A stretch of 63,417 nucleotides of DNA, filler included, from Octopus bimaculoides (Eukaryota), in NCBI RefSeq assembly GCF_001194135.2. It is 6 parts of 6 records of this genome, joined end to end, with 100 filler letters (N's around TTAATTAATTAA, not from the genome) between each part and the next. Parts side by side here need not be neighbours in the genome. Positions count along the whole stretch, not along the records: positions 22,770 to 41,669 come from NC_068983.1; 5 more parts are not named here. The stretch is one strand, 5' to 3'. Positions within the stretch are counted from its first letter, which is position 1, and each line of letters begins with the position of its first letter. Below are positions 22,971 through 40,085 of the stretch, piece by piece. Under the pieces are notes generated by a model. The model searched no databases. It was not told the DNA's origin and saw nothing but the letters and a program-made list of their open reading frames with translations. The translations under genes and the position numbers were made by a program.

Positions 22971-23503
22971 ATGAGAGAGTGAGAGAGACAAACACACACA
23001 CAAATGTATATACATTCAAATACTGACGGTGGCACATAGAAAGCACCCACTACACTCTCGGAGTGTTTGGTGTTAGGAAGGGCATCCAGCTGTAGAAACT
23101 TTTTCAGATTGGATTGGAGCCTGGTGCAGCCTTCTGGCTTGCCCGCCCTTAGTCAAACTGTCCAACCTATGCCACCATGGAAAGTGGATGTTAAACAATG
23201 ACGACGACAATGATGATGATGACTGTATGTAGTTGCACTCTTATGCAGACAAATCTATCAGGAAGTTATATTTGCAGTCTTCTAGGTCTTTGGGCATTTC
23301 TCAAAATATAAGCACTCTAGTTTTCTATGCAACCCTGTAGCATAAAATATAAAAGTGCTGAGTTCTAATGATGACAAAATAGCTGCTTAATGAATCGATA
23401 GCAGTGCTTTTAGGTTTCAAATTTTTTCTCTGATCTTTTGCCAATGGTTTTCAAAGAAATTGGCTGGAGATTCCATATATTGACCTTGAGAAGATATTTC
23501 TTC

Positions 23504-24959: not shown

Positions 24960-25602
24960 ACCAGGGGTGTAGCCAGCCAACTTATGCGTACCTTTCCTTC
25001 TTTGGACACTAAACTCTGCTTGCAAAGACCTGTTGAGGCAAGTGAAATTGAAATTGAAATCAAACCAAATTTGATGACTGGCACCCATGCCAACCTTCCT
25101 TCATTGGACACTAAACTCTGCTTGCGAAGACCTGTTGGAGCAAGTGAAATCGAAATTGAACCAAATTTGATGACTGGCACCCTTGCCAGTGGAGCGCTAA
25201 CAACACCATCTGAGCGGGATCATTGTCAGAACATGCTGGTGGCATGCAAAAAGCACCATTTGAGCATGATCATTACCAGCATCACCTTACTGGCACGTGA
25301 ACAAAACATTTGAGTGAGGTTGTTGCCAGTGCCGCTGGACTGACTCGTGTGCAGGCGGCATGTAAAAAACACCATTTGAGCGTGGCCATTGACAGTACTG
25401 CCTGACTGGCCCTCGTGCCGGTAGCACATAAAAGCACCTGCTACACTCTCGGAGTGGTTGGCATTAGGAAGAGCATCCAGCTGTAGAAACTCTGCCAGAT
25501 CAGATTGGAGCCTCTTGCAGCCATCTGGTTCGCCAGTCGTCAGTCAAATCGTCCAACCCATGCTAGCATGGAAGGCGGACGTTAAACGATGATGATGATG
25601 AT
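24960..25602 (+). mobile_element. Composite repeat family D with modular internal subrepeats and (GAT)n RTE-like tail (other copies about 23025-23222 +, 26114-26424 +, 30577-30865 -, 35188-35475 -, 37285-37615 +, 37805-37990 -, 40100-40300 -)
   Basis: Shared 3' end ttaggaagggcatccagctgtagaaac...cccatgctagcatggaa.gcggacgttaaacgatgatgat; ~100-bp tandem unit at about 24995-25195. Confidence 0.85.
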
Positions 25603-26806
25603 AAGCNNNNNNNNNNNNNNNNNNNNNNNNNNNNNNNNNNNNNNNNNNNNNNNNNNNNNNNNNNNNNNNNNNNNNNNNNNNNNNNNNNNNNNNNNNNNNN
25701 NNNNNNNNNNNNNNNNNNNNNNNNNNNNNNNNNNNNNNNNNNNNNNNNNNNNNNNNNNNNNNNNNNNNNNNNNNNNNNNNNNNNNNNNNNNNNNNNNNNN
25801 NNNNNNNNNNNNNNNNNNNNNNNNNNNNNNNNNNNNNNNNNNNNNNNNNNNNNNNNNNNNNNNNNNNNNNNNNNNNNNNNNNNNNNNNNNNNNNNNNNNN
25901 NNNNNNNNNNNNNNNNNNNNNNNNNNNNNNNNNNNNNNNNNNNNNNNNNNNNNNNNNNNNNNNNNNNNNNNNNNNNNNNNNNNNNNNNNNNNNNNNNNNN
26001 NNNNNNNNNNNNNNNNNNNNNNNNNNNNNNNNNNNNNNNNNNNNNNNNNNNNNNNNNNNNNNNNNNNNNNNNNNNNNNNNNNNNNNNNNNNNNNNNNNNN
26101 NNNNNNNNNNNNATGGACTGGCTCTTGTGCGAGTGACACATGAGGTTTTTCGAGCGAGATCGTTGCCGGTGCCCCTGGACTGGCTCTTGTGCGGGTGGCA
26201 CATAAAAGACACCATTTCGAGCGTGGCTGTTTTCGTGCGGATGACACGTAAAAGCACCCACTACACTCTCTGAGTGGTTGGCGTTAGGAAGGGCATCCAG
26301 CTGTAGAAACTCTGCCAAATTAGATTGGAGCCTGGTGTTGCCATCCGGTTTCACCAGTCCTCAGTCAAATCGTCCAACCCATGCTAGCATGGAAGGCGGA
26401 CGTTAAACGATGATGATGATGATAAGCAGGAGTCTGCTAGTAGAACCATCTTACTTTAAATGACTCTGTTGATATACAGTACATCCCCCATTACATTTTC
26501 CTATTTTGGTGAAGGTGTATCTCCCCCAGCTCCCACACAATACCACAGAATCTTAGCTGAGTCATTTGGATATTGGACTGTTGCCCAAAGTATTGATTCT
26601 TGAGATCAACACCACCCTGTTGTTTCCATGAATAAGACCTTTTACTTTCACTGATCCAGTTCACCTAACAATAACTAGACACCACGGGTAGGTGCAGCTC
26701 ACCACTGTAATAAAGGCTTTTGCTACATCAATAAAAAGGCAGGAGATGGTAAGTTTGGTAGAGCAACAAACAAAATTCTTTACTGGTTTTAGCTATGTTT
26801 AACTAT

Positions 26807-27201: not shown

Positions 27202-28224
27202 GTATGTTTCTTCACATTTTGAGTTCAAATCTCACCCTAAAGCATGGTTCATTTCATGCATGTTTTAATATTTTGGAGTGTTGAATTCAAATTTCTTGTT
27301 TGAGGATGGCAGGCACAGCAAGAAACAATATCAATATTATATTTCTTACAAAGAAACATCTCAGAATCTTGAGTTTATAGCACAACAAGCAAGCATCTTC
27401 TTGGATTTGATGACTGGCTTTATCATCAGTAGCATAAAGCTGTTACTTCCAATAGGATGTACTGGTATGGCTGATACTTCAAATGGAAGTGTGCTAATGG
27501 AAGATTAATTTCAGTGAGCAACTGATAGAATATTTTATAAGATATTTTACAGGTATGTTGATACCTTCTCACTGTTATAACGATGTAAATAACAACCACT
27601 CCTAAATCTAACATTAAATTGGTTATGATGCTAGATTACAGTTTTATAAGACTGAAGATTCATGTAGGTGTATATGTATAACTAGTGTGTATATGTATGT
27701 GTGTATATATATTCATGTGTGTGAATGGTTACTACCTTTCTTCTATAAGTGTATGTGAGTGTACCTGAACTTATATGTGTGTTGTGAAAATTGAAAAAAT
27801 AAAAAGTATTTCTCAAAGTTCTTTAGTAAAATGTCTTTTCAAGTGCTTAGCTTGTTTTAGCATATGGCATGGGTTTGATGGGTCTGCTGCTATAAAGCAC
27901 ACTTCCAGTCACACTTTCATGTGCTGTCTTGTGTTTTACAAACCAGAGTTTTTCAGTTATGCGAAGTTGTGTACATAAACATGCAGAGAGAAAGAGAGAG
28001 AGACACACACACACACACACACACACACAATTAAGTACAAACACACCTACACAAGTAGGTGTGTATGTACAAACACATATTCCCACTCACACTGACACAC
28101 ATTCATCCCAAACATGCAGACACACCTTGCATACATTTTAGTTTATTTATGATCCTAGTTAACTTTCATACACACACATACACATACTTTATATCCATTT
28201 TTCATTGCTTGCATGGGGGTTGGA

Positions 28225-28264
<40 letters not shown>

Positions 28265-29548
28265 TGAATTAAAAAAGTCCTTAAAGTATTAATAGTACTT
28301 TCTGGTATTTGTTTTGGTTCTATGTTTTCTGAGTTTAAATCCTGGCAAGGACAGTTTGTTTTTTCTCTTTTCAAGGTCAATAAATTAGGTACCAGTTAAA
28401 TGCTGGTCTCCTTAATTTCACTGTCTCTCTAATTTTACTCCTAAGGCACAGGCCAACCACAGGCTATAGTAGAAACTTGCCTTATATGAAGTGCAATATG
28501 ATCAAACCTGACACTATGTGGTTGTGAAGTAAATTTCTGAGTCACTTGGTCATGTATATGTGTTTAGGCACAGGAGTGGCTGTGTGGTTAAGAAGCTTGC
28601 TTCCCAACCATGTGGTCTTGGGTTCAGTCCCACTGTGCAGCACCTTGGGGAAAGTATTTTATACTCTGGCCTCAGACCAACTAAAGTATTGTGAGTGGAT
28701 TTGGTAGGCAGAAACTGAAAGAAGCCTGTTGTGTGTGTTTGTGTGTTTGTGTACACCCTTATCTAGCCATTTTGTGATAGTTGTAAATGAGCATTACTAT
28801 CATGCTAGCAACGTTGTTTGCTTCCAATCTTCCATGGTGAAATATTCCTTTGCTTGAAAACAAGTAAGGGTTGGTGACTGAAAGGACTTCTGGATGTAGA
28901 AAGATCTGCCTCAACAAAGTCTGTTTGACCCATGCAAGCATGGAATAGTGGACATTAAATGATGATGATACACATGCACACATGCACACATGTACACATG
29001 TACACATGCACACATGTACACATGCAAAAATGTTAGAAGTGGATGCAAATGATAGAAACACATGACAAATGATAATTAAACCCTTATCAATTATCTCATT
29101 GAGAAATATAGTATTTCAGTGCCTCAGCTAGAATTGTGTAGGAGTGTCAATGACTATTGAATATAGCTGTTGGACAATAGGAATGGGAGGAGATGAGACT
29201 AAAACATATAGTGGAATCTTTGCAAATATGACAGAAAAAACACAAATGCTGGGAAAGAAATTTAGTTATGACCAGTAAATGGGGCAGAGAAAGTAAAAGT
29301 GTAGGTCTGCTTATAATAATGTTAAATAATATGTAACTTTTTTTGTGACAAAAATAAAACATTAAGTGATCAGAAAGAAACAACAAAAAAAATGTTCCAG
29401 TTGAGAGAGAAAGAAAGTAAGCAATAATTGCGGGACAAAGTTTTTGAGTAAGTAAGGGAGGAGAGAATATGTTTGCCCACTTGATGATCTGAGAGATAAA
29501 AGAGAGAGATCAGTAGATAGAATGAAAGAAAAAAAGTGGCTAGCTGGG

Positions 29549-29631
<83 letters not shown>

Positions 29632-30100
29632 ACAGTAAGAAACTGTGTGAGAAAATGGTTGTTTTTAGTTTGGTTGTAAATGGAACTTCTTAATTACATA
29701 AGTCATGGATGTGTGTGTGTGTTTGTGTTTTACTCATTGTCTTGACAGGTTTGCATGCTGTATAAACACTGTCACATGTAGACTGTGTCATTGTTTAGTT
29801 TACTGCAAAAACAAGTCTGGTTGTCTGAGCACTCTTTAAATAATGACCAGTGTCTTTGCTTACATATGCTGTGAAAACAGGTCTAGTCGTTGAGAGCAAG
29901 TGAAATACTTCTTTACTTGCAAAAAAAGTGAAGGTTGGAGACAGGAAGAGCATAGCACTATAGAAAATCTTGCTTCAGAAAGTTTTGTCTAACATTTGCT
30001 AGTATAGAAAAACTGGATGCCATTTAAATGTTATACATACTCTATCAGAAGTACACTGTCTCATGTAAAAATATATGCTGTTTTTTTTTTTCTATTTCAG

Positions 30101-30144
30101 TATGTAAACCTCAAGTAGCTCAGGGCGAAATCTTGTCACACGAG
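30101..30144 (+). CDS. ITPK1: ITPK1 (inositol 1,3,4-trisphosphate 5/6-kinase) internal exon, (V)CKPQVAQGEILSHE
   Basis: Poly-T tract plus TTTCAG acceptor, GAG|GTAAGT donor, 44 nt, phase 1 to 0. Aligns with human ICKTRVAHGTNSHE and joins in frame to the 32747 exon. Confidence 0.9.
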
Positions 30145-30495
30145 GTAAGTAAATAAATTAGAAACTTAGAACCAAAGTATTAAGATTCTTCTTCACTACT
30201 CTCCCTGTTGCTATTAAATCTACCAAATAGTTTATTTACTTTTTGATATTTTATGGTTGACACGTGTAATACATTCTCATCTATTATGTTAAATTTCACA
30301 TTCTATGTGTACTAATAATATCTGCTATGGGATGACTATTGTATCACACAATTAAGCCACATTTGGTATTATCCCTTGGTTTTGGTGTCAAAGTCAATAA
30401 TACCTGAGTGAAAGGCATGCTAACCACAGCTTCATGTTTCTTGTGAGACTCTAAATATGAGTGATTCATTTTTATTTTTTGCATAAGAAACTATG

Positions 30496-30545
<50 letters not shown>

Positions 30546-31373
30546 GGTACATGTATATATATGTATATAGATATATCATCATCATCGTCGTTTAACGTCC
30601 GCTTTCCATGCTAGCATGGGTTGGACGATTTGACTGAGGACTGGTGAAACCAGATGGCTACACCAGGCTCCAATCTGATTTGGCAGAGTTTCTACAGCTG
30701 GATGCCCTTCCTAACGCCAACCACTCCGAGAGTGTAGTAGGTGCTTTTACGTACCACCATCACGAAGGCCAGTCAGGCAGTACTGGCAACGGCCATGCTC
30801 AAAATGGTGTATTTTACTTGCCACCTGCACAGGAACCAGTTTGGCGGCACTGGCAATGATCTCATATATGTATATATTTATATGTATGTATAAGTTTATC
30901 CCAGAAGTTCTATTTCTATTAGATGCTGTAAATAATCAATAAAACCTTAAGCAGATCTATGATGACATGAACGAATTGAAATATTCAACTGAATCATCAT
31001 AAGATTAACTTTCATTTCAATGCAATATTGAAACCAGCTTCAATCTTTTATAACCTGAACCGTCAGTGACTCAACAGGTCACTGGTAGTCTAGTATATCG
31101 GTATATATATGTGTGTGGATCATTAATTGAAAATGTCTTTTTTACACTCAGTTGCCTTACTGATGATATAAATAGTGTGAACAGATTATGCTTTCAATTT
31201 CATTCCATAGTTAAATGTTATGTATGTAGATCACAGTTGATAGGTCCACAGTTGTCCGGTTTCTCTTATGGATCTGGTCCCTTCAAAAAGGGTTATAGGG
31301 AAAGTGGGTTATATGTGCAAAGTCTTTTGGGAAATGGGAAAGTAATGAAAATATTATCGTTTTGTTTTCAGGA

Positions 31374-31405
<32 letters not shown>

Positions 31406-31659
31406 AGTAGTACAGGTATACTTACTACACAGTGACACACACAGAGACACTCAGTAAAATGGTTGGTGTTAGGAAGGGCATCCAACTATGAGACACTGGA
31501 GCAACGAATACTTCTTTGACCCACTTGATTCTGTGAAAACCTTTTAACTACGTAATCATGTGTGCGTGCATGTGTATACACACACACACACACACATGCT
31601 TACAACAATACATACATATATGTAAGAACGACCGTGCGAACCCAAAAGGAGAAATGGTG

Positions 31660-32445
31660 ACGAATGGAAAAAGAGGGCTCCTTTTATTAAACACGTCACA
31701 CGGTCGAACACAAAAATATATATCAAATGATATAAATATGTTATACTTCGATAACATAGTGAATTCGTAAATGGCCAGTAAGGAAGACGATAGAACACAA
31801 CCGATAAAGATGAATAACGGTAATATTTATTGTAGCATTAAAATGTATGTCTGTGTGTGAGTGTGAATGCGACATATTAAAACATAATAAAAGACAGGCC
31901 GTCGTGTAAAGAAAAGAGTGTGTGTAAGTGATACATGTATGTGTATGCGTGAGATACAGCAGATAGAGAAAGAGTCAGTAACACATATAAGAATTTGCCA
32001 GGTCTTAGAGTACACAATAGTAACAGTCTGTATATAAGAAGTTGAGGCGTGTGGGGAAGAGCGATCACTCGTCATGATGTTAAGGCTTCCATGCCAAGCC
32101 GGGTTTTTGAGTACAGATGTTCATCGCAGGCTGGGCTCTTGTCTATTATTTATCGTGGTGAAGATGAATCACACAAACAGAATCGAAGAGAGATGCGCCG
32201 CGGTTGTTTGGTTAGCTGGTGTACGTAGAAGTCATGTTGACGATGTTGGCGATGCTGGTGGCGAATCTTGTAGTTCGTAGTTGAAGTGGTGCTGATGCTG
32301 GTGACGACGATGGTGGTAGTCATAGTGTCGTGTTGACTGGCGGCGGCGATGCTGGTAGTCGCAGTTGGAGATGCTGTTGATGTCGTCGCTGGAACTGCTG
32401 CTGCTGTGTGGTACACGGAACAGGTCTCTAAGAGATCTGAACTGA
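31660..32445 (-). ncRNA. Putative intronless antisense transcript (lncRNA or small-ORF mRNA) nested in ITPK1 intron
   Basis: TATA and Inr upstream, CpG-rich body, no strong minus-strand donor seen, AATAAA on - at 31826-31831 and 31683-31688, the latter followed by a U-rich tract. No expression data. Confidence 0.4.
32150..32323 (-). CDS. First-AUG small ORF of the putative antisense transcript, 57 aa (MTTTIVVTSISTTSTTNYKIRHQHRQHRQHDFYVHQLTKQPRRISLRFCLCDSSSPR)
   Basis: First ATG after the predicted start site (ACACT ATG A). Low-complexity N-terminus; no homologue recognised. Confidence 0.2.
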   Translation of the reverse strand: MTTTIVVTSISTTSTTNYKIRHQHRQHRQHDFYVHQLTKQPRRISLRFCLCDSSSPR

Positions 32446-32670
32446 GACGAATTAGCTGGGTATCTAGCAGGCTATTTATAGCTGAAAGTAGGCTACAGAG
32501 AGCATCTGAAAAGCACTTCATCACGTGACCTTATTAGGGGCCACGGTTGGTCAGTTTGTGTTCTGGCGGGAACGGTATGCAGCAGTTGCCACTTCAAATA
32601 ATAGTTAGTCACGTGATGGATACAGTAGGCTGCTCTCCGCTACGCCCGCGCTTGTTTATATATAATGGCG
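32440..32670. promoter_or_regulatory. Candidate compact (possibly bidirectional) promoter in a CpG-rich island inside an ITPK1 intron
   Basis: TCAGTT Inr-like on - (32440-32445). CTATTTATAG, both a MEF2 consensus and TATAAATA on - (32472-32481). TCACGTGA (32521-32528), CArG CCTTATTAGG (32529-32538), GTCACGTGAT (32608-32617), TATATATAA on + (32657-32665). Confidence 0.6.
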
Positions 32671-32746
32671 ATAGTAGTTTTACTACATATATATTTGATA
32701 TATTTATCTCACATTATATTTTAAGATTCTGTCGTATATTTTGTAG

Positions 32747-32906
32747 ATGGCAATCATTTTTAATGAAGAAGGTTTGAAAGACGTGCGACCACCATGTGTA
32801 GCTCAAAGTTTCATCACTCATAATGCTGTACTGTACAAAGTGTTTGTTGTTGGTGATGAACAATTTATCTGTGAGCGGCCATCTCTCAAAAACTTGACTG
32901 CTGGTG
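32747..32906 (+). CDS. ITPK1: ITPK1 exon, MAIIFNEEGLKDVRPPCVAQSFITHNAVLYKVFVVGDEQFICERPSLKNLTAG
   Basis: TTGTAG acceptor, G|GTAAGT donor, 160 nt, phase 0 to 1. Strongly matches human MAIVFNQEGL...PPCVVQNFINHNAVLYKVFVVG...RPSLKNFSAG (ATP-grasp core). Confidence 0.97.
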
Positions 32907-33942
32907 GTAAGTTCATTTTATTTTATTTGTTGTATACAGTAGTTATCATTTTAAAGATACAGTGTATGCTAACCATTTGGTATTTGGTATTCAAATCTTT
33001 CTTTTGTATCCACTACTTTGATCATGTGATTGCTGAGATAGGTTCAAATTTTCTTACCTGGTTAATTATTGGTGGAGTGTGTGGTTGGTCAACTTGATAG
33101 GATGTCAACCAACCATATGGTTGGTTGGTTCATAGTCAGTCATGAGCACTATGTTGTATCTGTGTTCAAGACAGTTCTCAGAGCAGTGGATAGGACTTAA
33201 TGACTGAAGGAGGTGGATGGAAAAACAAAAACAATATCCTTATCAATTGAAATCTGGTTTTGTCCTCCTGTTAATCCAAGGTTGATAAATATGAACAGCA
33301 GAGCAAAATAATATAAAATATTGACAATGCCTGGTATATTTATTTTGTAGGTTGTTTTGATAAAACCACCAAAGTTTTTAGACTGTTTGGTCAAAGCTAC
33401 TTAATAAACAGCAGTGTTATTACACAACTTCACAATGTGACATCTGACATTTGGATTACATGAAAATTTATACTTTTGTCATATTTATTTGCAACATAAA
33501 TGTAGTGAAATGCTTCAAAGTAGGATTTGAAACCAAACCACAGACTTGCTTCAATGTAACTTTAGTTTGGACTATGTACCAGAAACAATAATATAAATTA
33601 CATTTATAACTACTATTTTAATCTTGCTTTTGTCTTTTTTATGATGTCTACCTCCCCCATTGAAAACTGATATAATAGTTTATAAACTGTTACTTCTACA
33701 TCACCTTTGTACCCCAAGCTTTCAGCTAATCAACTACAATATCTCTCCACCTTCTTTGTATTCCAGTGTATTCCATGAATTGACAACTGGTTTATACCAG
33801 TTGGGCTGCACCTTTGCTAAAACTGTCCAAACCTATTTAAATATGATATTTGAATTTAGCAGTTTTCAATCTTATTTTTCGTTCATTGTTAAGATAGACA
33901 TGTTTGGCCATGACTAGAAGGAAAATAATAAATGTAAACATA

Positions 33943-34730
33943 TACAAGGTCTGATCAGTAATGTTCTAGCACACTTCTGCTGCTTACAGCAGTGCTTGGA
34001 AAGAAGGTGTGTAGTGTGTGATCGTCACATTGACCATGACAGAGAAAGTTGTCCTGGTGATACCTGCTCAGAGGCCTACACAAAGTTGCAGAAAGTGTAT
34101 GGAGAGGACTGTATGAGCCACACACAAGTGTATGAGTAGTCCAAGATGGCTGAAAAAATGTCAATATCGATGAACATTCTGGGAGACTCACAACCAGCAG
34201 AACTGAGTAAAACATCACAGATGTGCATGCAACTGTGAGGGGAAATTGTCAAATCACCATCCATGAGTTATCAGAGGAGGTACAGATTAGTTATGGTTCA
34301 GTTCAGTCCATTATCACTGAAGATTTGGGTATGAGACGCGTGTCAGCCAAGTTTGTGCAAAAACTGCTTTCAGCTGACCAAAAAGACACTCGGGTTTCAG
34401 TTGCACAAGATTTCCTTGATGGTGTCGAGAACGATGAAAACTTTTTGAAAACTTTGCGTAGGCCTTTGAGCAGGTATCACCAAGCTTTTGGCAAAATTTG
34501 ATGCAGATTCTCTGCTCAACTTTCTTTGTCATGGTCAATGAGACGATCACATGCGACACATCTTCTTTCCAAGCACTGCTGTAAACAGTGGAAGTGAGCT
34601 AGAACATTAAAACTTATTGCGTATGCATAGCAGAGTTCAAGGTCAATCTGTGCCAAGCAGCTTCGATCTGTGTGCTTCAGCTTTGTTACTATGGCAACAG
34701 TCCGGATACTTATATCAATAAGACCACGTA
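33943..34730. mobile_element. Mariner fold-back: forward 5' half (33943-34457) fused to an inverted 5' end of the same family (34451-34730)
   Basis: Forward HTH peptide ITIHELSEEVQISYGSVQSIITEDLGMRRVSAKFV. Reverse peptide MTKKVEQRICIKFCQKLGDTCSKAYAK. Arms align by eye. Confidence 0.85.
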
Positions 34731-35092: not shown

Positions 35093-37239
35093 ACAAGGTA
35101 GTTAATGGTACTGGGTGTGTGTGAAAAATTTAATTTATACTAATAGATTCAGTAAGTATATCATAGGAAAGAATCTGTTGTTTGAAATCATCATCGTCAT
35201 CATCGTTTAACGTCCGCTTTCCATGCTAGCATGGGTTGGACGATTTGACTGAGGACTGGTGAAACCAGATGGCTACACCAGGCTCCAATCTGATTTGGCA
35301 GAGTTTCTACAGCTGGATGCCCTTCCTAACGCCAACCACTCAGAGAGTGTAGTGGGTGCTTTTATGTGTCACCCGCACGAAGGCCAGTCAGGCGGTACTG
35401 GCAACGGCCACGCTCAAAATGGTGCATTTTATGTGCCACCCACACAAGAGCCAGTCCAGGGGTACTGGCAACATTTTATATTTTACTTGTTTCAGTAATT
35501 AGACTGAAGCCATGCTGGGGCATCGCCTTGAAGAATTTGTAGTTGAATGAATCAACCTCCAGTACTTATTTTTTTTAAAGCTTGGTATTTATTCTATAGG
35601 TTTCTTTCGCCAAACTGCTCAGTTACAAGGGACACAAATACACCAACACTGGTTAAGTGGTGGTGGGGGACAAACACACACGTGTGTGTGTGTGTGTGTG
35701 CATCCCATCCCCACGCACAAAGGGCCTTCTTTTAGTTTCTGTTTACGAAATCCACTCACAAGGCTATAGTAGAAAACATTTGCTCAAGATGCCACACAGT
35801 AGGGCTGAACCTGGAACCATGTGGTTGGTAAGCAAGCGTCTTACAATACAGTCACCTCTGTGCCCATGATAATTATTGCTCTTAAAACAAAATTGTTAAT
35901 TAAATGAATTTTTACTTTTCTAACAAATTTACAAAAAGAAACGAATAGATGAACTTTGGGAACTATATTGAAGTCCTTAGGAATATAACAGCAGGATTAT
36001 AAGCATTAACTTCATGGAAAATTAAAGAGTACTTGGTCCCTGATGAGATCCCAACATAGGACTGAAACTAGTGTGGCTGGTCATTTTTTTTATTTTGTCC
36101 ATGAGAATACTGTATATAAAGAGAGTGTTTCTGTTTGTCTATTCTGTATAGGTGCAAGTATGGCTGTATGGTTAAGAAGCTCACTTTGTAGCCATGTGGT
36201 TTTGGGTTCAGTCCCACTGTATGGTTCCTTGGGCAAGTGTCTTCTACTTGTATCAGGCCAATTACCCCTTATAGGACAATTCCCCCTGACAACTACTCCC
36301 AGGACAATCCCTTGGTAAATTACCCCCTATCCAATATATTAAGAAGTTTTAAATCATCGTCTGTTGTCCTTGGGGGGTTATTGTCCAGGTTAATGTTCTA
36401 GACTCCTTCTACTATAGCCCTGGGCCTTGTTAAAGTTTTTGGAAGATGGAAACTGTTGTGTGTGTGTATGTAAACATGCATACATACATATGCATGCATG
36501 GTTTTGTTAGTCATACTCTGTGCTTGACAATCAGTATTGGTTTGTTTATGATTAATAGATCAATAGAACAAATACCAGACTTCAAAACAAAATGTTTGTT
36601 CGACTAAACACTTCAAGGTGGTGCCTCAGCATGGCTGCAGTCTAATGACTGAAACAAATACAAGTGCTAACTAAAACCTACAGATATATTCTGCCGTATA
36701 GTATAGCACTGAAATAAAACATTGTTAATGCCTCAGCAAATTATTAACTGATTTAGCTCCTTAGCTAATGTAGTATATATGCAAATTAGTCTGTCTGATT
36801 TAGTAATAGCAGGTCTATAAGTGATATTCTGCAGGCGGTTAATGAGGGTACTCAGGAACTGATGAAATCACAATAAAAGACAGAAACTAGTCCAGATGAT
36901 TTCTCTTTTTGTGTTGAAGATTTTGTCTATGTGAAGACAATGATGTACAGTATTAGCTAAATACCTATTCGTCCATTCATTTATCCAATCCTTTGTTCAT
37001 AAGTTGTTTTTTTTAAGCAAAGAATATTAAGATAAATGTTTTCTTCAAACTTTCATTTCATATTTCAAAAAAATATTCAAACAGTGAATATTTGAAAAGA
37101 AAAGCAGGCTTGGATTACCAGCTTATGATCGGACATGTGTAACTTAAAGTACTGGAAATAGGGGCCTTTCAGTTAGAATGTATTAGAGAATACACTTGTA
37201 TAGAGTTCTGTAATTTATCACTTCTAGTGAATCAACAAA

Positions 37240-37282
<43 letters not shown>

Positions 37283-37759
37283 CCCTGTCAGTGGCGTGTA
37301 AAATGCACTGTCTGAGCGTTGGGCCTCATAGAGGCAGTGAAGGTGACTGAGACTTTTGGCGATATACTGTCCTTGTGTAGACCTGTCAAGCCAAGTGAGA
37401 TTGTAGTCATGGCCAATGCTGGTGGCACATTAAAAGCATCCACTATACTCTTGGAGTGGTTGGCATTAGGAAGGGCATCCAGCCATAGAAACCTTGTCAA
37501 ATTGGACTGGAACTTGGTGTAGCTTCCTGGCTTACCAGTTTTCAGTCAAACCATCCAACCCATGCCAGCATAGAAAGCAGATGTTAAACAACAACAATGA
37601 TGATGATAATGATTATCATGATCATCCAGTGTTTTAAATCTGGGTTTTGTCTCTGTTAACAGGGGTGGCTAGATCTATCTCAATGCCATAGCAACTGAGG
37701 TAGGCAGGTGCAGCCCACCCCAACCTTTGGGCTGGCTGGCTGGTGCCCATTCTCCTTTG

Positions 37760-37805
<46 letters not shown>

Positions 37806-39699
37806 TCATCATCATCATTTAACATCAGTTTTCCATGTTGGCATGAGTTGGATGGTTGGACAGAAGTTGGGAAGCCAGAAGACTGCACCAGGTTTCACTG
37901 TCTGCTTTGGCATGGTTTTTATGGTTGGGTGCCCTTCCTAATGCTAACTGCCTTAGTGGACTGAGTGCTTTTTATGTGGCACCAGCACTAGTGAAATCTG
38001 TTTTAGCACATTATATATATAATATATTCAAATTTCACTAATTTTGATCGCCTTGATAATGTTATGTTAACATATATTTTTCAGAAATATTAATATAAAT
38101 TTTAATATTTTCTAATATGTGTGTGTGTGTGTGTGTATGTGTGTATAAATGCAATAGAAACAGTTGTTGGCTTTATAAAGTGAGAACTATAATAAAAATA
38201 TAATTTTCTCTATACATATTTTTTGTTGTCAAATATTCTAAATTTCTTAGAATTCTGCCCAAAGATATTTGAATTTACCTGTCATTCATGAGGATTTACC
38301 TGGGATCTGTATTCTACTTACATTTACTGGTGTCTAATTGTTGAACATTTGTAACCAAATTCTTTTCATACTGAGAGCTTTATTGACATCTGCCAGAATG
38401 TTTTAATCCCTTTTACTCCTATGTATATATATATGTGTATATATAGTTATACATCTTAAAGGTAATTGTTACTAAATTAATGTCAAACAAAAAAATTACT
38501 GTGACTTTATTTTGTCTTTGTTGTGCTGGCACTTCTTTGGCACACTATTGGAAATGTATTATACCAATAATTGGTCAAATAGAACGTATAACTAACATTA
38601 TTGTTCATAAAAATCTTGATATGAGCTATGAATAAATAAAAAAAAGCAACCAGTGTTTACAAGCCACTTATCTTGTTTGTCACATTTCACCACTCTTACT
38701 GCCATTGATATTGCACCTTCAACTCACTCACCTTCCCCTCATTGGTTACCAGAAGTTGTCGAACAACTCAGAATATTTCAGTCTTTTCACTCTCTTTATC
38801 TTTCTCTTCCTCTCGTCATCTCTTTTCATTTTGTTCTCGTTCTATTTCTCTATTTGTTTTCCTCTCTATCTTGCTATTGCATTGTGTCTTAGTCTTTCTA
38901 GTTTTCTTTCCTTCTCTCTCTCTTTCTACCTCCCTTCTTTCTCTCTCTCTCTCTCTCTCTAATTGCTTTAAAGACTAAAATGCATACACAGAAACCTGCA
39001 ATATACAGGCTTAGATGTATCACATTCACATGACAGTGATTTCTCCTTCAGTGCAAACATATATTCATATGCAAAGACCTATGTATGCATTCCTATTCAT
39101 AAAACACAGACATGTAAAGGAGACCTTGCTTCTGGTAGACATACACAAACATCCATGAATATCCAAATATGCACAGACAATCTTGTAGATAGACATACAC
39201 ACAAAATTGACTTGCATACACATAAGCATAAATGTAGAAACATACACACAAAATTTGTCTCTTCTCTCAGACTACATGTATTCATGTCCTGCTCCATATA
39301 TGTACTGACACACGTGTGCATGCTGGCACACATACACACATCTGCCTACTGGCTCATAGGCATTGACACACATGTACTTATGCTTACACATTGATACAGA
39401 CAACACATATGTATTAACATTTGTACCCACCCACATGCACGTACTACATAAAAGCCATGACATTTTACTGTTATTGTGTCAAAGTTTCATTTAATCTGTT
39501 TGCGTGACTTTTCTTCCAAATATAGTCCTTCTAAATGTGTATTCATTTGCTGCTTTTATTCAAATGATGCTACTAATAGTTATCAGTTGAAGAATTTATC
39601 AGGTTTACAATACTATAAAAGATGTTTTAAAATGACATCCTTTCTCCCACATAAAGGATGTTGTTGTTGTGCAGCCCCTGACTGAGAAAATTTATAATC

Positions 39700-40085
39700 A
39701 AAGCCATTCTAGCCTTGAAGATCCTGTCTTTTTAGCATATGTTGGTTGGGTCTAGCTGCTTGTCATTTCCTTTGTAAGGTTCAGTATCCTGAGATCAGCT
39801 TTCACCATTTCTTCCCACAGTTTCCTTGGTCTTCATCTTTCACAAACTCCTGCTGCATGTGTTGGTTTTCAGTTTTTCACTTAAATTTTATCTTCCATAT
39901 GCATTATATGACTGAACCAGCATCAAACCAGCTCTGGTTCACCCTTTCACACCTGATTGTTCTCATAAACACTTACTCTCTCAGCTCATCTAAACATTGC
40001 TATTCATGTATACTATCATTTACACATCTACCAAAGCATTCATCTTCATTTTCTATTTCTTGCCAATACACCTCTTCCTCATTCA
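39700..40085 (-). mobile_element. RTE-like LINE 3' end, degenerate
   Basis: Minus strand loosely follows the RTE terminal pattern (LRW.GHV.RM...GRGRPRKTW.EVVK.DL..L.LT.EMT), with stops and frameshifts. Confidence 0.5.

What the first reader, a model, noticed from the sequence alone, without database searches (positions are those of the whole stretch)
32440..32670. Symmetric promoter: MEF2/TATA, CACGTG, CArG, CACGTG, TATA
The minus-strand TATA starts 42 bp from the left CACGTG core (32480 versus 32522). The plus-strand TATA starts 42 bp from the right core (32615 versus 32657). A perfect SRF CArG box abuts the left E-box, and the minus TATA is also a perfect MEF2 site. SRF, MEF2 and bHLH combinations typify muscle and activity-induced genes; GTCACGTGA also fits USF/MiT-TFE or clock E-boxes. 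Function is inferred. The Inr-like TCAGTT lies 37 bp from the TATA, slightly far.
Basis: partly seen in the sequence, partly recalled or inferred. Interest (0 to 1): 0.7.

Follow-up and report, generated by a model that had tools for sequence, protein, structure and literature searches.

The report
Mirror-symmetric promoter module inside intronic insertion
The motif pattern is real and far beyond chance, but it lies in a roughly 1.06-kb piece of DNA that a related species lacks, inside an intron of the ITPK1 gene, so it is most likely a promoter carried in by an inserted (probably mobile) element and not a conserved host promoter for muscle or activity genes.

Summary
Two TCACGTGA E-boxes lie inside a perfect 11-nt inverted repeat. 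One CArG box abuts the left E-box. Two outward-facing TATA boxes, each also a MEF2-consensus match, sit exactly 42 nt from their E-box. Simulations put this far above chance.

The context changes the reading.
- The plus-strand "gene" 82 nt downstream of the TATA is an internal ITPK1 exon (human residues 170-222) with a conserved splice acceptor, so the module is intronic.
- Contigs from a related species (exon 97% nt identity) join window 31621 directly to 32684. The whole segment 31622-32683 is absent there, and in the window it is flanked by a perfect 9-bp duplication, TACATATAT.
- The segment is the only part of the 18.9-kb piece that is not CpG-depleted (observed/expected about 1.1, against 0.33 overall and 0 just downstream).
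- Read on the minus strand it is a self-contained unit: E-boxes, TATA, initiator, about 760 nt with no credible ORF, then AATAAA. With shifted borders it reads TG...CA with a 4-bp duplication, like a solo LTR.

Best reading: a lineage-specific, probably mobile, promoter-bearing insertion. No other copies were found and no transcription data could be consulted. The muscle/activity interpretation is not supported.

The parts
31613..31621 (.). Left copy of the 9-bp direct duplication TACATATAT (a candidate target-site duplication)
   Evidence: The L001-L003 contigs hold a single copy where the window holds two. L001 1-253 aligns to window 31384-31621 and L001 245-968 aligns to 32684-33446.
31622..32683 (-). 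1,062-bp segment absent from the related species. It carries the whole motif cluster, is not CpG-depleted, and has no credible ORF. An alternative border reading is 31621-32687, giving TG...CA ends with a 4-bp TATA duplication.
   Evidence: Searches show the empty site in L001-L003. CpG observed/expected is 1.05-1.15 (52 CpG), against 0.33 for the piece and 0 CpG in 32970-33869. There is no second copy in the piece and no protein homolog in any frame.
32684..32692 (.). Right copy of the 9-bp direct duplication TACATATAT
31683..31688 (-). AATAAA polyadenylation-signal match on the minus strand, about 755 nt downstream of the predicted minus-strand start and 61 nt before the end of the segment. 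T-rich sequence follows it.
   Evidence: This is a sequence match only; function is inferred.
32150..32440 (-). Low-complexity stretch, C/A-rich on the minus strand, with degenerate 21-29-nt repeats. All minus-strand frames are partly open. The first AUG, at 32323, opens a 57-codon ORF with no homologs.
   Evidence: (repeat families D1, D2). Pfam gives only a sub-threshold low-complexity match (New_glue, 23 bits against a cut-off of 31).
32440..32455 (-). Initiator-like matches on the minus strand: CTAATTC (32455->32449, A at 32453, 27 nt from the TATA) and TCAGTT (32445->32440, A at 32443, 37 nt from the TATA)
   Evidence: Read directly from the sequence. No transcript data were available.
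32472..32481 (-). Minus-strand TATA box CTATAAATAG, which is also a perfect YTAWWWWTAR (MEF2 consensus) match
32519..32529 (.). Left arm of the perfect 11-nt inverted repeat, CATCACGTGAC (E-box core 32522-32527)
   Evidence: (pair I23).
32529..32538 (.). CArG-consensus match CCTTATTAGG, abutting the left E-box
   Evidence: It is one of two matches in the whole piece.
32608..32618 (.). Right arm of the inverted repeat, GTCACGTGATG (E-box core 32610-32615)
   Evidence: (pair I23).
32656..32665 (+). Plus-strand TATA box TATATATAA (32657-65), which is also a second YTAWWWWTAR match (32656-65). The predicted start, near 32687, falls on the right border of the segment.
32747..32906 (+). Internal exon of ITPK1 (inositol-tetrakisphosphate 1-kinase). 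The AG acceptor is at 32745-46 and the GTAAGT donor at 32907-12. The exon happens to begin with an ATG that is the first ATG after the predicted plus-strand start.
   Evidence: PDB 2odt residues 170-222 match at E = 2e-19. It is the only ITPK1 exon in the piece. The acceptor is conserved in L001 and L004. The donor was read. There is no ATG in 32666-32746.

Best explanation
The motif cluster is the promoter region of a roughly 1.06-kb, non-coding, lineage-specific insertion (31622-32683). The insertion is most likely a mobile element and resembles a solo LTR. It landed in an intron of ITPK1, 63 nt upstream of the 3' splice site of an internal exon.

Proposed mechanism, inferred from anatomy only:

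- Class B bHLH-Zip factors (USF or MiT/TFE type) bind the two TCACGTGA sites. An SRF-type factor may bind the CArG box.
- They recruit the Pol II machinery to the TATA box about 42 nt away.
- The main unit runs on the minus strand: TATA at 32481-72, initiator near 32453-32443, about 760 nt of non-coding RNA, then AATAAA at 31688-83. That RNA is antisense to ITPK1.
- The mirror-image plus-strand TATA could fire outward across the insertion border. Such a transcript would have the exon's own ATG (equivalent to human Met170) as its first AUG, giving an N-terminally truncated ITPK1 product.

The module is not the ITPK1 promoter and not a conserved host regulatory element.

Shown: the motifs and their spacing, the intronic position, absence from a related species, the flanking duplication, the CpG contrast, and the lack of coding capacity.

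Inferred: insertion rather than deletion, mobility, factor binding, and any transcription.
For: 1. Indel with a duplication.
   - L001-L003 (contigs from at least three sequencing runs of a related species) align to window 31384-31621 and 32684-33446.
   - They hold one copy of TACATATAT where the window holds two, flanking 1,062 bp.
   - No register of the indel gives GT-AG ends, so this is not a splicing artefact (sequence).
2. Distinct mutational history with matching borders.
   - CpG observed/expected is 1.05-1.15 across the whole segment, including its AT-rich left half. It is 0.33 for the piece, 0.18-0.45 to the left, and zero CpG for about 900 bp to the right.
   - It is the only undepleted segment in 18.9 kb.
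   - In octopus, methylation is concentrated in the bodies of a subset of genes and is scant in promoters and transposons (PMC9476566).
3. Self-contained layout on the minus strand: E-boxes/CArG, TATA, initiator, about 760 nt, AATAAA, T-rich tail. With borders shifted, the element reads TG (31621)...CA (32687) with a 4-bp TATA duplication and TGTA/TACA termini, as LTRs do.
4. The module is non-random, so it probably evolved as a promoter somewhere.
5. The host context rules out a canonical promoter.
   - The neighbouring exon is internal.
   - The 63 nt between the insertion and the exon are 92% identical to L001, against 76% for the rest of the intron. The insertion therefore spares the constrained branch-point and polypyrimidine region.
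6. The more distant relative L004 has no comparable motifs or CpG-rich stretch in the 538 bp upstream of the same exon.
Against: - No second copy of the segment was found: none in the piece, and none through six-frame ORF searches of 5.8 billion and 1.84 billion proteins.
- These negatives are weak. The gene caller behind those collections skips many non-coding ORFs, and no eukaryotic genome could be searched at the DNA level.
- There are no terminal inverted repeats beyond 4 nt, no poly(A) or simple-repeat tail, no tRNA or ribozyme feature, and no transposase or reverse-transcriptase remnant.
- The LTR reading needs 5 of the 9 duplicated bases to match by coincidence. It also implies an unusually long R region of about 760 nt.
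- A microhomology-mediated deletion in the other lineage would leave the same pattern, and the site is low-complexity (CATA/TA-rich).
- An unmethylated host promoter island would also stay CpG-rich.
- No transcript, CAGE or chromatin data could be consulted.
Confidence: 0.55

Rival explanations
1. The segment is an ancestral host intragenic promoter island, later deleted in the related species. On this view it is a genuine, germline-unmethylated bidirectional promoter inside ITPK1. It would drive an antisense non-coding RNA and possibly a short ITPK1 isoform. The lineage of L001 lost it through a deletion between two TACATATAT microhomologies.
For: - Motif architecture is beyond chance.
- CpG observed/expected is about 1.1, as expected for an unmethylated promoter inside a methylated gene body (PMC9476566).
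- The duplicated 9-mer is low-complexity and could serve as microhomology.
- There is no ATG between the predicted plus-strand start and the exon's in-frame ATG.
Against: - The CpG step coincides with the indel borders on both sides to within a few tens of bp, which would be a coincidence for a pre-existing island.
- The AT-rich left 500 bp of the segment carries no promoter motifs but is equally undepleted.
- The more distant relative L004 has nothing comparable in the 538 bp upstream of the exon.
- Loss of a functional promoter would have had to be tolerated.
- Both 9-mers would have had to stay identical while neutral intron sequence diverged by about 24% between the species.
Confidence: 0.2
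2. The segment is a one-off capture of ectopic DNA and is not a mobile element. A fragment copied from the promoter and 5' region of some other gene in the same genome was inserted at a double-strand break. It brought a real promoter with it, but the insertion has no family of copies.
For: - There are no TE hallmarks apart from the flanking duplication: no TIRs, no tail, no TE protein remnants, and no second copy detected.
- The left half of the segment resembles ordinary AT-rich octopod non-coding DNA with (TG)n-like tracts.
- The right half looks like a promoter plus a 5' UTR.
Against: - Break-repair captures do not usually produce a clean 9-bp duplication of the target.
- The fragment would have to end within a few nt of the predicted plus-strand start and just past a poly(A) signal on the other side. 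That completeness is more typical of a unit that moves as such.
Confidence: 0.13
3. The cluster is a chance or relic motif cluster with no promoter function, made of consensus matches that are not bound or used in vivo.
For: - The motifs were picked after looking at the sequence.
- TATA-like strings are common in this AT-rich genome (328 TATAWAW matches in the piece).
- The arms are otherwise dissimilar.
- There is no conservation and no transcript evidence.
Against: - Two identical 11-nt E-box arms, mirror-exact TATA positions, a CArG box and two 10-nt MEF2/TATA matches fall within 231 bp.
- The expected counts are 0.005, 0.001 and 0.007.
- These are the only TCACGTGA sites in 18.4 kb.
Confidence: 0.1

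Closest known systems
Solo LTRs of LTR retrotransposons, which are self-contained promoter/terminator units, often with antisense promoter activity
   Same: - Length of about 1 kb and no coding capacity.
- Enhancer sites, then TATA, then transcribed region, then AATAAA, all in one orientation.
- TG...CA ends with TGTA/TACA termini and a 4-bp flanking duplication are available under shifted borders.
- Presence/absence difference between related species, and no CpG depletion.
   Different: - The most parsimonious duplication is 9 bp, not 4-6 bp.
- The implied R region of about 760 nt is unusually long.
- No second copy and no full-length element with gag-pol was found.
- A mirror-exact second TATA at the U3 edge is not a standard LTR feature.
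Intronic TE-derived alternative promoters that produce N-terminally truncated host proteins, such as the intronic MT-C LTR that drives the oocyte Dicer isoform in mouse (from my own knowledge, not checked here)
   Same: - A promoter-bearing insertion sits in an intron just upstream of an internal coding exon.
- The first AUG of the predicted plus-strand transcript is the exon's in-frame Met.
   Different: No transcript evidence exists here. The predicted product would lack the first approximately 168 residues of ITPK1, and whether it would fold or act is unknown.
TATA plus upstream USF-type E-box core promoters, such as the adenovirus major late promoter, and CLEAR-type elements (GTCACGTGAC) bound by MiT/TFE factors (from my own knowledge)
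   Same: - The left site reads TCACGTGACC and both sites contain TCACGTGA.
- Each 10-mer matches GTCACGTGAC at 9 of 10 positions.
- Each E-box lies upstream of a TATA box, about 70-80 nt from the predicted start.
   Different: - The E-box-to-TATA spacing here is 42 nt start to start, which is longer than I recall for the adenovirus promoter.
- No lysosomal or other target gene is attached, and factor binding was not tested.
TATA-containing bidirectional promoters of divergent gene pairs, such as histone H2A-H2B pairs (from my own knowledge)
   Same: Two outward-facing TATA boxes lie about 177 bp apart, with shared upstream sites between them.
   Different: There is no gene pair. One side holds an internal exon of a much larger gene and the other holds non-coding low-complexity sequence. 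The module is not conserved.

Membership tests
Bidirectional promoter of a divergent gene pair | Two head-to-head genes whose first exons flank the promoter | tested here: not met
   The plus side holds an internal ITPK1 exon with an acceptor site (human residues 170-222). The minus side has no ORF with any homolog.
Bidirectional promoter of a divergent gene pair | Divergent transcription starts less than 1 kb apart | not testable with these tools
   No CAGE, RACE or RNA-seq data were available. Only TATA and initiator matches are present.
Bidirectional promoter of a divergent gene pair | Conservation at the orthologous locus | tested here: not met
   The whole segment is absent from L001-L003. 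There are no such motifs upstream of the exon in L004.
Solo LTR | 5'-TG...CA-3' termini with short terminal inverted repeats | tested here: inconclusive
   TG at 31621-22 and CA at 32686-87 are available, with TGTA/TACA termini (6 of 10 positions match). This holds only if the borders are shifted from the most parsimonious 9-bp register.
Solo LTR | Target-site duplication of 4-6 bp | tested here: inconclusive
   A 4-bp TATA duplication fits the shifted borders. The observed perfect duplication is 9 bp, so 5 bases would have to match by coincidence in a low-complexity target.
Solo LTR | Promoter (U3) and polyadenylation signal (R) in the same orientation | tested here: met
   The minus strand carries a TATA at 32481-72 and AATAAA at 31688-83, followed by T-rich sequence. 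These are sequence matches only.
Solo LTR | Other copies in the genome, including pairs that flank gag-pol | not testable with these tools
   No eukaryotic genome could be searched at the DNA level. Indirect ORF-based searches were negative but weak.
DNA transposon with a 9-bp duplication (Mutator-like or Merlin-like) | Terminal inverted repeats | tested here: not met
   The ends GTAAGAACGA and GTAAAACTAC (reverse complement of the right end) share only the first 4 nt. The repeat finder reports no terminal inverted repeat.
DNA transposon with a 9-bp duplication (Mutator-like or Merlin-like) | Target duplication of 8-11 bp | tested here: met
   A perfect 9-bp TACATATAT lies on both sides, and the related species has a single copy.
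Non-LTR retroposon or processed retrocopy | 3' poly(A) or simple-repeat tail, or a tRNA/7SL/5S-derived head | tested here: not met
   Neither end has such a tail. There are no tRNA genes and no Rfam family in the segment.
Muscle-type MEF2 / SRF / myogenic bHLH regulatory module | MEF2 site YTA(A/T)4TAR | tested here: inconclusive
   There are two perfect matches (32472-81 and 32656-65). Both coincide with the TATA boxes, so sequence alone cannot assign them to MEF2.
Muscle-type MEF2 / SRF / myogenic bHLH regulatory module | CArG box CC(A/T)6GG | tested here: met
   CCTTATTAGG lies at 32529-38.
Muscle-type MEF2 / SRF / myogenic bHLH regulatory module | Myogenic (class A) E-box, CAGCTG or CACCTG type | tested here: not met
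   The CANNTG sites in 32440-32670 are CACGTG (twice), CATCTG and CAGTTG. CACGTG is the class B site (established knowledge).
CLEAR-type (MiT/TFE) promoter | GTCACGTGAC-like palindromes close to the start of a lysosomal or autophagy gene | tested here: inconclusive
   There are two 9-of-10 matches (ATCACGTGAC and GTCACGTGAT), but no such gene is attached.

The most novel reading that the evidence does not exclude
A compact, non-coding mobile Pol II unit with a base-exact mirror-symmetric core promoter (TATA, 42 nt, TCACGTGA, 82 nt, TCACGTGA, 42 nt, TATA) has inserted 63 nt upstream of an internal ITPK1 exon that begins with Met. It is active in both directions. It produces an antisense RNA and a species-specific, insertion-driven ITPK1 isoform that lacks the N-terminal approximately 168 residues. 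It would represent a type of cephalopod mobile element that has not been described.
Probability: 0.1. Interest if true: 0.55.

Novelty: new member of a known kind. Interest (0 to 1): 0.3.

Why it matters
If the module is active, it would be a clear case in a cephalopod of an inserted element bringing a ready-made promoter into a housekeeping gene. Possible consequences are antisense transcription and a truncated inositol-phosphate kinase isoform. That would bear on how the transposon-rich octopod genomes generate lineage-specific regulation.

As it stands, the main value is corrective. A striking textbook motif cluster turns out to be non-conserved, intronic and probably imported. It should not be annotated as a host muscle or activity-response promoter, nor as the ITPK1 promoter.

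Tried and rejected
- **Long palindrome or inverted duplication.** Ungapped mirror identity over 130 nt is 32%, unremarkable against the rest of the piece. Gapped alignments of the outer and inner arms, excluding the 11-nt repeat, are not significant (P = 0.4-0.8). Rejected: only the sites and their spacing are symmetric.
- **Small RNA gene between or beside the TATA boxes.** Rfam at E <= 1 gives only sub-threshold mir-297/466-type hits on a (CA)n/(TG)n tract at 31551-31613, outside the segment. No tRNAs were found.
- **Coding first exon on the minus strand.**
  - The 124-aa ORF has no homolog in 5.8 billion proteins.
  - In the 1.84 billion representatives it gives only two weak multi-stretch matches, which I read as low-complexity.
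  - Pfam gives a sub-threshold low-complexity match.
  - Eleven other stop-free stretches from all frames, concatenated into one query, also gave nothing.
- **Exact look-ups** of the 124-aa ORF and of the 116-aa exon ORF found nothing on record. The window's own species therefore appears to be absent from the contig collection.
- **Viral, phage or prokaryotic origin.**
  - No phage match.
  - No exact 20-mer in viral contigs.
  - No 18-mer in prokaryotic genomes.
  - Seven metagenome 18-mer hits do not extend beyond 20-23 nt; I read them as chance matches.
- **Splicing artefact.** None of the ten possible registers of the indel has GT-AG ends, and the compared contigs come from a different species.
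- **Sigma-70 promoter and terminator scan.** Counts were at background level and the scan does not apply to a eukaryote.
- **Identifying the species behind the Logan runs.** A literature search by run accession found no paper.
- **Mariner-type transposase at 34223-34501.** This was my guess from reading the ORF. Pfam and PDB searches did not support it.

Full report
**1. The observation**

- The minus-strand TATA, CTATAAATAG, lies at 32481-32472 and also fits the MEF2 consensus.
- CACGTG cores lie at 32522-27 and 32610-15.
- The CArG box CCTTATTAGG lies at 32529-38.
- The plus-strand TATATATAA lies at 32657-65. Together with the preceding T it is a second MEF2-consensus match.
- An initiator-like TCAGTT has its A at 32443, and a second initiator match, CTAATTC, has its A at 32453.

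The two E-boxes sit in a perfect 11-nt inverted repeat, CATCACGTGAC and GTCACGTGATG (pair I23). Both TATA boxes are exactly 42 nt from their E-box. All four elements therefore share one symmetry centre at 32568.5.

The arrangement is well beyond chance.

- In 18.4 kb of non-N sequence, TCACGTGA occurs twice, both here. CArG occurs twice (one here) and YTAWWWWTAR three times (two here).
- First-order Markov simulations give expected counts in 231 bp of 0.005, 0.001 and 0.007 respectively.
- The chance of a TATA at the exact mirror position is below 1e-3.

The symmetry is limited to these sites. Outside the 11-nt repeat the arms are not significantly similar.

**2. Gene context**

The ORF that starts 82 nt downstream of the plus-strand TATA is not a first exon. 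Its translation matches human ITPK1 residues 170-222 (PDB 2odt, E = 2e-19).

- It is preceded by an in-frame TAG and a ttttgtag acceptor.
- It ends at a GTAAGT donor (32907).
- It is the only ITPK1 exon in the piece.
- The same acceptor is present in two other species.

The motif cluster therefore lies in an ITPK1 intron. More than 9.9 kb of this piece upstream and more than 8.7 kb downstream hold no further ITPK1 exon.

**3. Comparison with relatives**

A search with the exon returned two close relatives, and their contigs were fetched.

Contigs L001-L003 come from at least three sequencing runs of one related species. Their identity to the window is 97% in the exon and 76% in ordinary intron. 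They align to window 31384-31621 and then directly to 32684-33446.

- The 1,062 bp between those points, which carry every motif of the finding, are absent.
- The related species has one copy of TACATATAT where the window has two flanking copies.
- This is the classic filled-site against empty-site pattern of an insertion with a target duplication. A microhomology-mediated deletion would look the same.
- No register of the indel gives GT-AG ends, so it is not a splicing artefact.

The more distant relative L004 has no E-box, CArG box, MEF2 match or CpG-rich stretch in the 538 bp upstream of the exon.

The 63 nt between the segment and the exon are 92% conserved. The extra DNA therefore sits just outside the constrained 3' splice region.

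**4. Nature of the segment**

The segment is the only part of the 18.9-kb piece that is not CpG-depleted.

- It has 52 CpG and an observed/expected ratio of 1.05-1.15. This holds even in its AT-rich left half.
- The ratio is 0.33 for the piece overall and 0.18-0.45 immediately to the left. There are no CpGs at all for about 900 bp to the right.
- The step coincides with the indel borders.
- In octopus, methylation marks the bodies of a subset of genes and is scant in promoters and transposons (PMC9476566).
- The contrast therefore means the segment is either recently arrived or unmethylated. It has a different history from the surrounding intron.
- SINE-like repeats in the same intron show intermediate values of 0.46-0.85.

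Other properties:

- It has no credible ORF and no homolog in any frame.
- It has no Rfam or tRNA feature, no terminal inverted repeats and no tail.
- It has no viral or prokaryotic counterpart.

Read on the minus strand, it is laid out as a complete Pol II unit:

- upstream E-boxes and CArG box;
- TATA and initiator;
- about 760 nt of low-complexity RNA;
- AATAAA at 31688-83, followed by a T-rich tail 61 nt before the border.

If the borders are shifted within the low-complexity duplication, the element reads TG...CA with TGTA/TACA ends and a 4-bp TATA duplication. That is the form of a solo LTR. This reading needs five coincidental matches, so it remains a lead.

**5. Most likely mechanism**

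The cluster is best read as the promoter of an imported, probably mobile, non-coding element. Class B bHLH-Zip factors would bind the two TCACGTGA sites, perhaps with an SRF-type factor at the CArG box. They would support initiation from the TATA 42 nt away.

The minus-strand unit is the complete one, and its RNA would be antisense to ITPK1.

The plus-strand TATA points out of the element. Its predicted start, near 32687, falls on the border. No ATG intervenes before the exon's in-frame Met at 32747. If active, it could therefore yield an N-terminally truncated ITPK1. All transcription and binding steps are inferred.

**6. Rivals**

- An ancestral host promoter island deleted in the other lineage (0.2).
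- A one-off capture of a promoter fragment from elsewhere in the genome (0.13).
- A functionless motif cluster (0.1).

Copy number could not be tested. No eukaryotic genome can be searched at the DNA level here. The protein collections omit many non-coding ORFs, so the negative homolog searches are weak evidence.

**7.

- A promoter-like, possibly bidirectional architecture is supported.
- A host promoter serving genes on both sides is not supported.
- The muscle and activity reading is not supported. The E-boxes are class B sites, not the myogenic type, and the MEF2 matches cannot be separated from the TATA boxes.

**8. Verdict**

This is a real and statistically striking motif arrangement. 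It sits in a lineage-specific, intronic, probably mobile segment. I rate it a new member of a known kind (a promoter-bearing insertion, LTR-like) and of modest interest unless transcription data show that it drives an antisense RNA or a truncated ITPK1 isoform.

Noticed in passing
window 23024-23214, 25309-25606, 26149-26427, 30574-30864, 35187-35473, 37417-37609, 37801-37991: At least seven copies, in both orientations, of a 190-290-bp SINE-like repeat family at 70-92% identity. CpG observed/expected is intermediate, about 0.46-0.85. No tRNA-like head was detected by ARAGORN.
   Followed up: partly
window 33959-34051 and 34517-34609: 93-nt inverted repeats at 89% identity bracket a segment of about 650 bp, which looks like a TIR-type non-autonomous DNA transposon. 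The ORFs inside it gave no Pfam or PDB match.
   Followed up: partly
window 32684-32746: The last 63 nt of the intron before the ITPK1 exon are 92% identical to the related species, against 76% for other intron sequence. This probably reflects a constrained branch-point and polypyrimidine region. The extra segment lies immediately upstream of it.
   Followed up: yes
window 25607-26112: A run of 506 N (an assembly gap) lies between two SINE-like copies.
   Followed up: no
window 31551-31613: Sub-threshold Rfam hits to mir-297, mir-466 and related families on both strands (best 41 bits against a gathering score of 90). They fall on a (TG)n/(CA)n palindromic microsatellite next to the left border, so they are most likely a low-complexity artefact.
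   Followed up: partly
window 32970-33869 and much of 27270-29369: These intron stretches have zero or one CpG per 300 bp. Such extreme depletion is consistent with ITPK1 being a gene whose body is methylated in the germline (PMC9476566).
   Followed up: partly
window 28770-30269 and 38270-39769: Strong and opposite GC skews (+0.32 to +0.36, and about -0.28) mark strand-biased low-complexity tracts, for example CT-rich sequence near 38800.
   Followed up: no
L004 860-1498: The contig of the more distant relative carries a called 212-residue gene downstream of the ITPK1 exon. It has no Pfam hit, and its translation under table 11 contains nine stops. It may be a repeat-derived call or a call made under another genetic code.
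   Followed up: no
L006, L007, L008 (metagenome contigs): Three of the seven metagenome 18-mer hits share 20 identical bases, CATCACGTGACCTTATTAGG, with the window. I guess they reflect a conserved microbial coding motif. The similarity does not extend further.
   Followed up: partly
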